A stretch of DNA of 63,528 bases, filler included, from Platydemus manokwari (taxonomy: Eukaryota): assembly GCA_037951405.1 (NCBI GenBank). It is 6 parts of 6 records of this genome, joined end to end, with 100 filler letters (N's around TTAATTAATTAA, not from the genome) between each part and the next. Parts side by side here need not be neighbours in the genome. Positions count along the whole stretch, not along the records: positions 1 to 8,773 come from JBBMOY011351982.1; 5 more parts are not named here. One strand, 5' to 3'. The stretch's first letter is position 1; every line of letters begins with the position of its first letter. The translations under genes and the position numbers were made by a program. Positions 1 through 45,990 of the stretch are shown here, piece by piece. The notes beneath the pieces are model-generated. The model was given only the letters and a program-made list of their open reading frames with translations. It had not been told where the DNA came from and did no database searches.

Positions 1-154
1 TAATGATTTGCTACAGCACACACACAAGTGTTTACATCTGGTGTCAAATTCCGGTTATTAAGTTATAGACCCAATAGGAATATCGATAATTGAGAATTAC
101 TGACCACAGCATTCTAAATGTTGCTACTATTCAAATTAATAGAAGTATTAACAT

Positions 155-752
155 TGTGAGAATTTTAAATTGAATTGATTTTGTAATAAATTTGACTTTA
201 TATAAAATTATATTAATTTTTTTAAATTATTTTATTTAAATAAAATTTTTAGTGTAATGACTTTTCAGTTCGTTTTCGATCCGTGTTTTATAAAATAGTA
301 AGGGTTACATGGCGACTACGTAGCTGGATTCAACACTGAGATGATCAATGACTGAAAATTATGGAAAAGAAGAGAAAGATCTTGTCACCATATAGACAAT
401 ATATTAAGATAAAAAGATGTAGAGAAGATCTTGAGAATATATAAAGATATAGAAAAGATATAAAGTAGATTTAGAGGATATATTAGCAAGATAGAAGAAT
501 TAGAGTTCTTTAATGTAGATAAATATGTGAGCGTTCGATACAATGCCAATAAAGAAATTCAGAAATTGTAAAGAAAATGGGATGTGAGAATTTCAAATTG
601 AATTAAAACTTTTAAAGTTAGATTTTGTACGAAATTTGATTTTATAACTTTATTTTAATGAGCTTAAATAATTTTATTTAAATAAATTTTCTAGTCTCAT
701 GAATTTTCAGTTTTTTTTCGATTTGTGTTTTATAAAATAGTAACGGCTTATA
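155..752 (+). mobile_element. TRIM-like non-autonomous LTR retroelement, copy 1 (LTR 155-309, PBS from 310, PPT 570-582, LTR 583-752)
   Basis: Direct repeats begin TGTGAGAATT and end GGTTACA / GGCTTATA. TGGCGACTACG follows the 5' repeat directly and AAAGAAAATGGGA precedes the 3' repeat. Flanks AACAT/CACAT match 4 of 5 as a TSD. Homologous copies lie at 32244 and 38261. Confidence 0.8.
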
Positions 753-1853
753 CACATAATAATATTTATTGAAATTATAAATTTATACTATTACTTTTAT
801 AAATAAATGCCGAGCTGAACTATTAAAATCCAGCACAGAATCTTGCCATAATAGCCATCTTACAAGTTCTCTTCACCAAAAGCTAATTTTTTTTAAATTT
901 AGTGATTCTTAAGATTACATACTGGTAACTAGAATACACTCCAATAAAAAAATCTGTATTAAACAAAGTACAAAAGTGGTTGTAGCTCTTTTAACATTTT
1001 TTACATATTGCTCATAAAACGTGTATGCGCACTAGTATGCATGCATTAATCTAAAGTATAATGATTGATCATTAAAAAAATCTAGAATAATTCACAACCA
1101 GTGATGTTCCTGTCTGGATAAACGTCAATACTATAAGAATCTACTGAAATAAGGGATTATTGTAAGATTAAATAGGAGAAGCAATTAAGCATGCAACCAA
1201 AAAGCCAAGTAAAGCAATAGTCATTGTAATTAACTATGGTGAAATTGCTTCTATAGGTATTTAAAAATATCACTCATAAGGGTTACATTAGTGAGCATAT
1301 ACCATACATCAGATATGTATTCACAAAACCTGATTAATAAGGTTCTCATTATGTCTATCATAAAATCGAATCAGTTAACCTTGGAAAAATAAATCAGAAT
1401 ATATTGCGAAAAAATAATTATTTCAGAAAAAAACTTGCCAAGAAAAGAAATTCAGAATCAGAAATGTTATTAGATATTCACAATTAGAGCCAAAAAATAT
1501 AATTGAAGGAATGATCTCATATTTGCTGAATGCTCAAATATTAAATATAATGACAACTGCATTTCTGATTCGATTTACTTATTTAGTTATCAGAAAATAT
1601 CCCAGTTTATCTGGTCTACAATTAAAAACTCGAATTAATGATCAACAATGCCGTGTATTTTCCAATTTACATGAAAAACATTTGTTTTTAAACATTTCGT
1701 TTGCATTTGTTGACGATGAGCAGCAATAATTGGGTGGTGTTACTTTCCTCTGAATAAAAATAAGCGATCAATATAATATCTACAGGAACTTAAATTCCAA
1801 AATTAATATTCTTTACAAATCTTCCATGAAATACAGAGTTTTCAAAGGGCATT

Positions 1854-45829: not shown

Positions 45830-45990
45830 TGTGAGAATTTTTAAATGAATTACAGTTGAAAGATTTTAAAATCATATTTTTTATAAAATTTTTGTTTTTT
45901 TAAAAAATTGTAATTAAAATATAATATAGCGTCATGAATTTTCAGTTCATTTTCAAAGCGTGCTGTACAAAAATGTTAGCGTATAAAACA
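45830..45990 (+). mobile_element. Solo or degenerate LTR of the TRIM-like family
   Basis: TGTGAGAATTT...GTCATGAATTTTCAGTTCATTTTCAAAGCGTGCTGTACAAAA matches the LTR of copies 1-3, with no internal region. Confidence 0.65.

What the first reader, a model, noticed from the sequence alone, without database searches (positions are those of the whole stretch)
155..752. Miniature LTR retroelement (TRIM) family: three full copies plus a solo LTR in 63 kb
Seen: copies at 155-752, 32244-32779 and 38261-38828, and a lone repeat at 45830-45990, on three different contigs. Each full copy has 130-175 bp direct repeats (TGTGAG...TTACA consensus), a 230-275 bp purine-rich non-coding core, and a polypurine tract abutting the 3' repeat. 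Copies 1 and 3 have TGG directly after the 5' repeat and 5-bp flanks matching 4 of 5 (AACAT/CACAT, ACCAT/GCCAT). Established: LTR-PBS-short internal-PPT-LTR with a 5-bp TSD defines TRIMs, non-autonomous elements mobilised by LTR retrotransposons; TRIMs are known from taeniid cestodes. Inference: this is a high-copy family with a possible NNCAT target bias. I do not recognise it as a described family, but I cannot check repeat libraries.
Basis: partly seen in the sequence, partly recalled or inferred. Interest (0 to 1): 0.78.

Follow-up and report, generated by a model that had tools for sequence, protein, structure and literature searches.

The report
Old high-copy miniature LTR retroelement (TRIM)
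Window 155-752 is one decayed copy of a non-coding miniature LTR retrotransposon (TRIM) present in thousands of copies in this AT-rich animal genome; it is a clean new example of a known kind of mobile element, not a new kind.

Summary
Window 155-752 is LTR (155-309), a 273-bp non-coding purine-rich core (310-582) and LTR (583-752), flanked by AACAT/CACAT.

The same LTR-core-LTR unit recurs at many unrelated loci of this 911-Mb genome, at 70-78% identity to the window copy. The LTR-end/PBS junction has 1,851 matches within 2 mismatches, against 7 for the control.

Every defining TRIM feature tested was met at family level:
- Ends are TGTGAG...GGCTTACA.
- A 12-nt primer binding site, TGGCGACCACGC, abuts the 5' LTR. 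It is exactly complementary to the 3' end (with CCA) of a tRNA-Arg(ACG) gene fragment in the same genome.
- A polypurine tract abuts the 3' LTR.
- Target-site duplications are 5 bp and no other length (P<2e-5).
- Solo LTRs carry duplications, and there is no coding capacity.

LTR pairs are 62-97% identical (window copy 83%), so the family is old, with a younger subfamily.

The suggested NNCAT bias is better described as a weak palindrome-like A-T-N-A-T preference.

It is not the taeniid ta-TRIM, a Cassandra/Helenus/Ajax element or a retrozyme. No autonomous partner or RNA evidence was obtained, and Repbase/Dfam could not be checked. Verdict: new member of a known kind, modest interest.

The parts
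150..154 (+). 5' copy of the target-site duplication (AACAT)
   Evidence: It matches 753-757 at 4 of 5 positions. At family level, only the 5-bp register shows flank identity.
155..309 (+). 5' LTR, 155 bp, TGTGAG...GGTTACA
   Evidence: An LTR profile built from 48 LTRs matches 155-305 at E=2e-25. Family conservation starts at 155.
310..321 (+). Primer binding site TGGCGACTACGT; 10 of 12 positions match the family form TGGCGACCACGC
   Evidence: The family form is the exact complement of GCGTGGTCG+CCA. That is the 3' end of the tRNA-Arg(ACG) gene fragment L082 in the same genome.
310..582 (+). Internal non-coding region, 273 bp, 66% purine
   Evidence: An internal-region profile matches 310-581 at E=3.9e-58. 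There is no ORF above 54 aa and no Pfam match. No Rfam family is found.
414..476 (+). Degenerate purine-rich repeat of about 11 nt (unit about AAGATCTAGAG, 6 copies)
   Evidence: Tandem Repeats Finder. The number of units varies between copies of the family.
570..582 (+). Polypurine tract AAAGAAAATGGGA abutting the 3' LTR (family form AAAGAAAGGGGGA)
583..752 (+). 3' LTR, 170 bp, TGTGAG...GGCTTATA (terminal CA decayed to TA)
   Evidence: The LTR profile matches 583-750 at E=2.9e-25. The family alignment places the end at 752.
753..757 (+). 3' copy of the target-site duplication (CACAT)

Best explanation
Window 155-752 is an old, inactive copy of a terminal-repeat retrotransposon in miniature (TRIM). 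[quoted passage not shown]

**Inferred life cycle**
1. An RNA starts in the 5' LTR and ends in the 3' LTR.
2. The RNA is packaged by the Gag/Pol of an unidentified autonomous LTR element.
3. tRNA-Arg(ACG) anneals to the 12-nt PBS next to the 5' LTR and primes minus-strand DNA.
4. The polypurine tract next to the 3' LTR primes plus-strand DNA.
5. The partner's integrase joins the TG...CA ends to a 5-bp staggered cut, with a weak A-T-N-A-T preference. This produces the 5-bp duplication.

**Later history**
- LTR-LTR recombination gave solo LTRs.
- Unequal exchange gave LTR-core-LTR-core-LTR tandems.

**Shown versus inferred**
- Shown here: the ends, PBS complementarity, PPT, duplication length, dispersal, copy number, solo LTRs, lack of coding capacity and age spread.
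- Inferred: transcription, packaging, and the identity and existence of the partner.
For: **Dispersal and copy number**
- The genome search gave 4,449 first-look candidates. The 40 places scored are all 70-78% identical to the window copy.
- The LTR-core-LTR order recurs at about 30 unrelated loci.
- The LTR-end/PBS 18-mer has 1,851 matches at up to 2 mismatches, against 7 for the control.
- The LTR start has 1,715 matches against 0. The LTR end has 2,940 against 4.

**Boundaries and ends**
- Conservation starts at 155 and ends at about 752.
- The family ends are TGTGAG and GTAGCGGCTTACA.

**Primer binding site**
- The family PBS is TGGCGACCACGC.
- L082 is a tRNA-Arg(ACG) fragment scoring 36.8 bits on the Rfam tRNA model. 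It is cut at its 5' side by the contig end and is followed by a T run.
- L082 ends GCGTGGTCG. With CCA added, this is the exact 12-nt complement of the PBS.
- 9 of 27 copies match 12/12 and 20 of 27 match at least 10/12.

**Polypurine tract**
- AAAGAAAGGGGGA lies directly before the 3' LTR.

**Target-site duplication**
- Flank identity per position is 0.76 in the 5-bp register. It is 0.18-0.32 for lengths 3, 4, 6, 7 and 8.
- Of 15 copies delimited by script, 4 are perfect and 11 match at least 4/5. P<2e-5 against shuffled pairings.
- Solo LTRs carry duplications: ACCGG/ACCGG at L043 and AAGAA/AAGAC at L011.

**LTR pairing**
- LTRs within an element are closer to each other (mean 0.79) than to LTRs of other elements (mean 0.72).
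- For the window copy, each LTR's nearest relative among 48 LTRs is its own mate.

**No coding or known RNA content**
- No ORF exceeds 54 aa, and there is no Pfam or Rfam match.
Against: - No autonomous element sharing the ends, PBS and 5-bp duplication was found.
- The only public run holding the stretch is a contig set of unrecorded library type, none of the holders is on record as RNA, so transcription is untested.
- The tRNA-Arg(ACG) gene is seen only as a 55-nt 3' fragment on a 365-bp contig.
- A search for full-geometry tRNA 3' ends ending CGTGGTCG gave counts no higher than the control.
- RNAalifold predicts no conserved structure in the core, so no packaging signal can be pointed to.
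- The window copy itself is degraded: PBS 10/12, 3' LTR end TA instead of CA, duplication 4/5.
Confidence: 0.9

Rival explanations
1. It is a dispersed fragment of a satellite or tandem repeat with a period of about 430-445 bp (one 'LTR' plus one 'core'), not a retroelement.
For: Three loci show more than one period: LTR-core-LTR-core-LTR at L026, L035 and L046.
Against: - Most loci hold exactly two LTRs and one core, inside unrelated unique flanks.
- The flanks carry 5-bp duplications.
- Solo LTRs with duplications exist.
- PBS and PPT sit exactly at the junctions.
- Short tandems sharing an LTR are also reported for ta-TRIMs, where they are ascribed to unequal crossing over (PMC4558846).
Confidence: 0.02
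2. It is a small-RNA-promoter TRIM (Cassandra, Helenus or Ajax type) transcribed by RNA polymerase III, or a retrozyme with hammerhead ribozymes in its repeats.
For: These elements have the same overall size and LTR-PBS-PPT-LTR layout (PMC10886601, PMC4918200).
Against: - cmscan against all of Rfam at E up to 1 finds no tRNA, 5S or hammerhead match in the window copy.
- The same holds for three younger copies and one solo LTR.
Confidence: 0.02
3. It is a tRNA-derived SINE-like or composite repeat. On this view the stretch after the first repeat is an antisense remnant of a tRNA, not a working PBS.
For: - The leader shows weak similarity to the tRNA-Arg complement beyond the 12 nt, needing a 2-nt gap (shuffle P about 0.014).
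- A second repeat family carries a 36-nt complement of the same tRNA.
Against: - The complement begins exactly at TGG, directly after the LTR's terminal CA. It includes the non-templated CCA, as a PBS does.
- SINEs have no terminal direct repeats, no PPT, and no fixed 5-bp duplications with TG...CA ends.
Confidence: 0.02
4. It is the same TRIM family, but still mobile or co-opted: young copies are transcribed and LTRs act as promoters, as in taeniid ta-TRIMs.
For: - A younger subfamily exists, with LTR pairs 0.97 (L005), 0.92 (L019) and 0.91 (L026) identical.
- More than 100 listed places match each of the searched 17-21-nt family junction and terminus motifs exactly.
Against: - No RNA data are available.
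- No identical LTR pair was seen among 24 elements.
- The window copy is 17% diverged between its LTRs.
Confidence: 0.15

Closest known systems
Plant TRIMs (Witte et al. 2001), as defined in PMC6934838 and PMC10886601
   Same: - Total length is under 1 kb.
- Terminal direct repeats are 100-250 bp.
- A PBS lies directly after the 5' repeat and a PPT directly before the 3' repeat.
- There is no coding capacity.
- Solo repeats and short tandems occur.
- The duplication is 5 bp. That plant TRIMs also make 5-bp duplications is from my own knowledge of Witte et al. 2001, which I did not read here.
   Different: - There is no sequence relation.
- The host is an animal.
- The PBS matches tRNA-Arg(ACG). 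The classical plant TRIMs use initiator tRNA-Met (from my own knowledge, not checked here).
ta-TRIM of taeniid cestodes (Koziol et al. 2015, PMC4558846)
   Same: - It is an animal TRIM with TG...CA LTRs, a tRNA-complementary PBS and a PPT.
- It has solo LTRs with duplications and occasional tandems.
- It has roughly a thousand or more copies per genome (at least 1,183 similar loci in E. granulosus, PMC4558846).
   Different: | Feature | ta-TRIM | This family |
|---|---|---|
| LTR length | about 198 bp | 155-170 bp |
| Core length | about 590 bp | about 275 bp |
| PBS | 9 nt to tRNA-Leu, 4 nt from the LTR | 12 nt to tRNA-Arg(ACG), 0 nt from the LTR |
| PPT | 3 nt from the LTR | 0 nt from the LTR |
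| Duplication | 4 bp | 5 bp |
| Expression and candidate partner | known (partner 'lennie') | neither known |
biv-TRIM of bivalves (PMC6934838) and hymenopteran TRIMs (cited in PMC10886601)
   Same: They are animal TRIM families of similar size, and for biv-TRIM no autonomous partner was identified.
   Different: - biv-TRIM lacks a recognisable canonical PBS, whereas this family has a clear one.
- There is no evidence of sequence relation; this was not tested, because those sequences were not on hand.
Cassandra, Helenus and Ajax (TRIMp3; PMC10886601)
   Same: They share the TRIM architecture. Ajax, fungal Helenus and plant Helenus also make 5-bp duplications, and some animal Helenus use tRNA-Arg as primer.
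   Different: Those families carry a tRNA- or 5S-derived Pol III promoter inside the LTR. None is detectable here.

Membership tests
TRIM (terminal-repeat retrotransposon in miniature) | Total length under about 1 kb, with terminal direct repeats of about 100-250 bp | tested here: met
   The window copy is 598 bp with LTRs of 155 and 170 bp. Other copies are 556-640 bp.
TRIM (terminal-repeat retrotransposon in miniature) | LTR ends TG...CA | tested here: met
   The family ends are TGTGAG...GGCTTACA. In the window copy the 5' LTR is intact and the 3' LTR ends TA through decay.
TRIM (terminal-repeat retrotransposon in miniature) | PBS complementary to the 3' end of a host tRNA, next to the 5' LTR | tested here: met
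   TGGCGACCACGC is the complement of GCGTGGTCG+CCA of the tRNA-Arg(ACG) fragment L082. 9 of 27 copies match 12/12, and the window copy matches 10/12. Only a partial tRNA gene was seen.
TRIM (terminal-repeat retrotransposon in miniature) | Polypurine tract next to the 3' LTR | tested here: met
   The family form is AAAGAAAGGGGGA. The window copy has AAAGAAAATGGGA at 570-582. Spacing to the LTR is 0 nt.
TRIM (terminal-repeat retrotransposon in miniature) | Target-site duplication of fixed length | tested here: met
   Only the 5-bp register shows identity: 0.76 per position against 0.18-0.32 for other lengths, P<2e-5. Across 20 sites including two solo LTRs, 8 are perfect and 16 match at least 4/5.
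TRIM (terminal-repeat retrotransposon in miniature) | No coding capacity | tested here: met
   The longest ORF is 54 aa with no Pfam match. Indels between copies break any reading frame.
TRIM (terminal-repeat retrotransposon in miniature) | Mobilised in trans by an autonomous LTR retrotransposon | not testable with these tools
   No partner was found in the 158 kb of loci held.
ta-TRIM (taeniid cestodes) | About 198-bp LTRs, a tRNA-Leu PBS 4 nt from the LTR, 4-bp duplications and a core of about 590 bp (PMC4558846) | tested here: not met
   All four features differ.
Cassandra / Helenus / Ajax (TRIMp3) | A 5S- or tRNA-derived sequence inside the LTR | tested here: not met
   No Rfam match at E up to 1 in the window copy, in three younger copies or in a solo LTR.
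Retrozyme | Hammerhead ribozyme in each terminal repeat | tested here: not met
   No hammerhead family was matched.

The most novel reading that the evidence does not exclude
The element's leader may have been born from reverse transcription running on into the primer tRNA.

- After the 12-nt PBS, the family leader can still be aligned to the complement of tRNA-Arg(ACG), with a 2-nt gap.
- A separate repeat carries a 36-nt complement of the same tRNA's 3' half, including CCA. The full 18-nt tRNA-Arg PBS has 38 matches against 4 for the control. In the two copies read, similarity between them stops exactly at the end of that 36-nt stretch.
- If reverse transcriptases in this animal routinely copy primer tRNA far beyond 18 nt, these loci would be integrated records of that aberrant step.
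- The second family could then mark the TRIM's autonomous partner lineage.
Probability: 0.1. Interest if true: 0.5.

Novelty: new member of a known kind. Interest (0 to 1): 0.3.

Why it matters
- TRIMs are well known in plants but have been reported from only a few animal groups: hymenopterans, taeniid cestodes, bivalves and nemerteans (PMC10886601, PMC6934838).
- This family is unusually clean for an animal TRIM. It has a canonical 12-nt PBS with an identifiable tRNA, a PPT, an exact 5-bp duplication, thousands of copies and several age classes.
- That makes it useful for repeat annotation of this fragmented genome and as a dating marker.
- It also gives a precise search key for its unknown autonomous partner: TGTGAG...TTACA ends, a tRNA-Arg(ACG) PBS and 5-bp A-T-N-A-T-like target sites.
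- It does not change what is known about how such elements work.

Tried and rejected
- **Satellite reading.** Rejected on the duplications, the unique flanks and the solo LTRs.
- **Small-RNA or ribozyme content in the LTRs.** None was found.
- **Conserved RNA structure in the core.** RNAalifold on 27 copies predicts 0 pairs, so no packaging signal can be proposed.
- **Full-geometry tRNA genes ending CGTGGTCG.**
  - The pattern counts equalled the control, and ARAGORN found no gene in the five loci.
  - One of those five loci, L082, did hold the useful tRNA-Arg fragment, recognised by eye and by Rfam.
  - Thirty high-scoring tRNA loci gave no better match. The best was tRNA-Arg(CCG), with 8 nt contiguous by my reading after correcting ARAGORN's 3' boundary by one base.
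- **Loci with the PBS motif but weak similarity to the window copy's parts in BLAST (L043, L044, L045, L046), as partner candidates.**
  - L043 and L044 have no ORF of 90 aa or more, apart from one low-complexity 103-aa ORF in L043.
  - L045 and L046 are truncated copies of a TRIM subfamily.
- **Organism identification.** A cadherin exon in L026 says only 'metazoan'. The run's organism name is coded.
- **Expression.** Only one run holds the stretch. It is kept as contigs and its library type is not on record, so nothing can be said about transcription.
After that only counts and short matched strings were used.
- **Consensus.** A per-column majority table printed by my own script served only as a conservation profile. 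I give no full-length consensus here.

Full report
**1. The observation**

- The window piece is 26% G+C.
- Two direct repeats lie at 155-309 and 583-752.
  - They align end to end, with one 16-bp insertion in the second repeat.
  - Identity is about 83% over shared columns. BLAST between the two gives E about 4e-32.
- The first repeat starts TGTGAG and ends GGTTACA. TGG follows at once.
- The second repeat is preceded by AAAGAAAATGGGA and ends GGCTTATA.
- The flanks are AACAT and CACAT.
- The 273-bp core is 66% purine. It holds a degenerate 11-nt repeat at 414-476.
- The core has no ORF above 54 aa and no Pfam match.

**2. It is a dispersed, high-copy family with sharp boundaries**

- The window's own genome is 911 Mb in 1.99 million contigs.
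  - A search gave 4,449 first-look candidates.
  - The 40 places scored (46 matches, including shorter secondary pieces) are on different contigs, and each place's main match is 70-78% identical to the window copy.
- BLAST of the three parts, and profile searches, show the order LTR-core-LTR at about 30 loci with unrelated flanks.
- In a MAFFT alignment of 24 complete copies, the majority fraction is 0.3-0.47 in the flanks and 0.7-0.9 from 155 to about 752.
  - The second best is the last 50 nt of the core.
- Counts of short junction motifs:

| Motif | Mismatches allowed | Matches | Control |
|---|---|---|---|
| LTR-end/PBS 18-mer | up to 2 | 1,851 | 7 |
| LTR start 21-mer | up to 1 | 1,715 | 0 |
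| LTR end 17-mer | up to 1 | 2,940 | 4 |

- Summed contig depth over 271-324 is about 45,800, against 9.75 on the single-copy flank.
  - The tool warns that this is not a copy number. It only agrees in order of magnitude with thousands of copies.

**3. The signals of an LTR retroelement**

*Ends.* The family ends are TGTGAG(C/A)AT and GTAGCGGCTTACA.

*Primer binding site.*
- The first 12 nt after the 5' LTR are TGGCGACCACGC in the majority of copies.
- Contig C1355333 (L082) ends in the 3' 55 nt of a tRNA gene.
  - It scores 36.8 bits on the Rfam tRNA model, against a cut-off of 29, and is cut at its 5' side by the contig end.
  - Its anticodon loop is CUACGGA, giving anticodon ACG (Arg).
  - A T run follows the gene.
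- Its 3' end, GCGTGGTCG plus CCA, is the exact complement of the 12 nt.
- 9 of 27 copies match 12/12 and 20 of 27 match at least 10/12. The window copy matches 10/12.

*Polypurine tract.* AAAGAAAGGGGGA lies directly before the 3' LTR.

*Target-site duplication.*
- For 15 copies delimited by script, flank identity per position is 0.76 in the 5-bp register.
- It is 0.18-0.32 for lengths 3, 4, 6, 7 and 8.
- Four copies are perfect and 11 match at least 4/5. No shuffle of pairings out of 50,000 reached the observed total.
- With copies read by eye from the alignment and two solo LTRs, 8 of 20 sites are perfect and 16 match at least 4/5.

*Solo LTRs and tandems.*
- Solo LTRs carry duplications: ACCGG/ACCGG at L043 and AAGAA/AAGAC at L011.
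- Three loci hold LTR-core-LTR-core-LTR tandems. This arrangement is also described for ta-TRIMs (PMC4558846).

**4. Age and subfamilies**

- LTR pairs within an element are 0.62-0.97 identical, mean 0.79. LTRs of different elements average 0.72.
- For the window copy (0.83), each LTR's closest relative among 48 LTRs is its own mate. This is expected if the two were identical at insertion.
- A subfamily has the LTR start TGTGAGAATATCAAATTG and a shortened PPT region. Its pairs are younger: L005 0.97, L019 0.92, L026 0.91.
- With an assumed rate of 1-5e-9 per site per year, the window copy would be roughly 20-100 million years old. The youngest sampled copy would be roughly 3-14 million years old. 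The rate is an assumption, not a result.

**5. Target preference**

I tallied by hand the five bases next to LTR starts (91 usable rows) and LTR ends (99 rows).

| Duplication position | Commonest base | LTR-start set | LTR-end set | Background |
|---|---|---|---|---|
| 1 | A | 58% | 60% | 38.5% |
| 2 | T | 58% | 46% | 35.5% |
| 4 | A | 48% | 54% | 38.5% |
| 5 | T | 65% | 44% | 35.5% |

- At position 5, A falls to 5% and 20% in the two sets.
- Position 3 is near background in the first set. In the second set C is 25%, against 13% background.
- ATNAT makes up 12-15% of sites, against about 1.9% expected. Much of this is ATTAT or ATAAT inside ATT-type microsatellite-like sequence.
- This is the weak palindrome-like preference usual for integrases.
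It is a part of this wider pattern.
- These are hand counts and may be off by a row or two.

**6. What it is not**

- No Rfam family matches the window copy, three younger copies or a solo LTR at E up to 1. It is therefore not a Cassandra, Helenus or Ajax element and not a retrozyme.
- It differs from ta-TRIM in LTR and core length, primer tRNA, PBS and PPT spacing, and duplication length (PMC4558846).

**7. What remains open**

- No autonomous partner was found.
  - Four loci carried the PBS motif but only weak BLAST similarity to the window copy's parts.
  - L043 and L044 have no real ORFs.
  - L045 and L046 are truncated subfamily copies.
- No RNA run holds the stretch.
- No conserved RNA structure was predicted in the core.
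- The organism is a metazoan (a cadherin exon in L026), but its name is withheld.
- Repbase and Dfam were not available.

**8. Verdict**

This is a real and well-formed TRIM family, several thousand copies strong. It is mostly ancient, with a younger subfamily, and is primed by tRNA-Arg(ACG). It is a new member of a known kind and of modest interest.

Noticed in passing
window 1-76: The first 76 bases of the contig belong to a much more abundant repeat. Summed contig depth is about 340,000-700,000, against 9.75 on the single-copy part. The contig probably ends there for that reason.
   Followed up: no
L079:749-867 and L084:7310-7426 (contigs C615661 and C1390981): A second repeat family carries a 36-nt complement of the 3' half of tRNA-Arg(ACG), including CCA. 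About 95 nt of shared sequence lies before it, with no TG...CA end next to it. Similarity stops exactly at the end of the tRNA part. Genome-wide, the full 18-nt PBS TGGCGACCACGCCAGGAC has 38 matches against 4 for the control. It could be another LTR family using the same primer, or a product of tRNA read-through.
   Followed up: partly
L047:180-222 and L048:205-245: These are short contigs of higher G+C (44-47%). Each has a tRNA-like 3' part ending GTTCGA(A/T)TCCCTTTGTGGTCG but no full tRNA by ARAGORN or Rfam. They may be a SINE head, or DNA of another organism in the sample.
   Followed up: no
L057, L060, L063, L065, L067, L069, L076 (contigs found through tRNA genes): These are AT-rich contigs with tRNA genes packed next to long uninterrupted ORFs of 220-427 aa. 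L063 holds two adjacent long ORFs (239 and 221 aa). Some other tRNA loci hold tRNA genes with an encoded CCA. This looks like an AT-rich bacterium (symbiont or contaminant) in the assembly.
   Followed up: no
L026:1-729: An open frame encoding cadherin repeats lies about 550 bp upstream of a tandem TRIM cluster at L026:1289-2358. This shows that the host is a metazoan and that copies sit close to genes.
   Followed up: partly
Flanks of L015, L017, L019 and L024; rows: Many copies sit in ATT/AAT microsatellite-like sequence: ATTAT followed by T after the LTR in 9 of 99 rows, and TATTAT or AATAAT before the LTR in 11 of 91 rows. Either such tracts are favoured targets or they are simply very common in this genome.
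   Followed up: partly
L029:2529-2888: An open frame of 120 aa that, read by eye, looks like a possible reverse-transcriptase fragment of a retrotransposon (LTR or non-LTR type not determined). It is unrelated to the TRIM next to it. It was not run against any family library.
   Followed up: no
window 1039-1094 (minus strand): A weak Rfam match to mir-2187: 26 bits against a cut-off of 67, E=0.35. Most likely chance.
   Followed up: no
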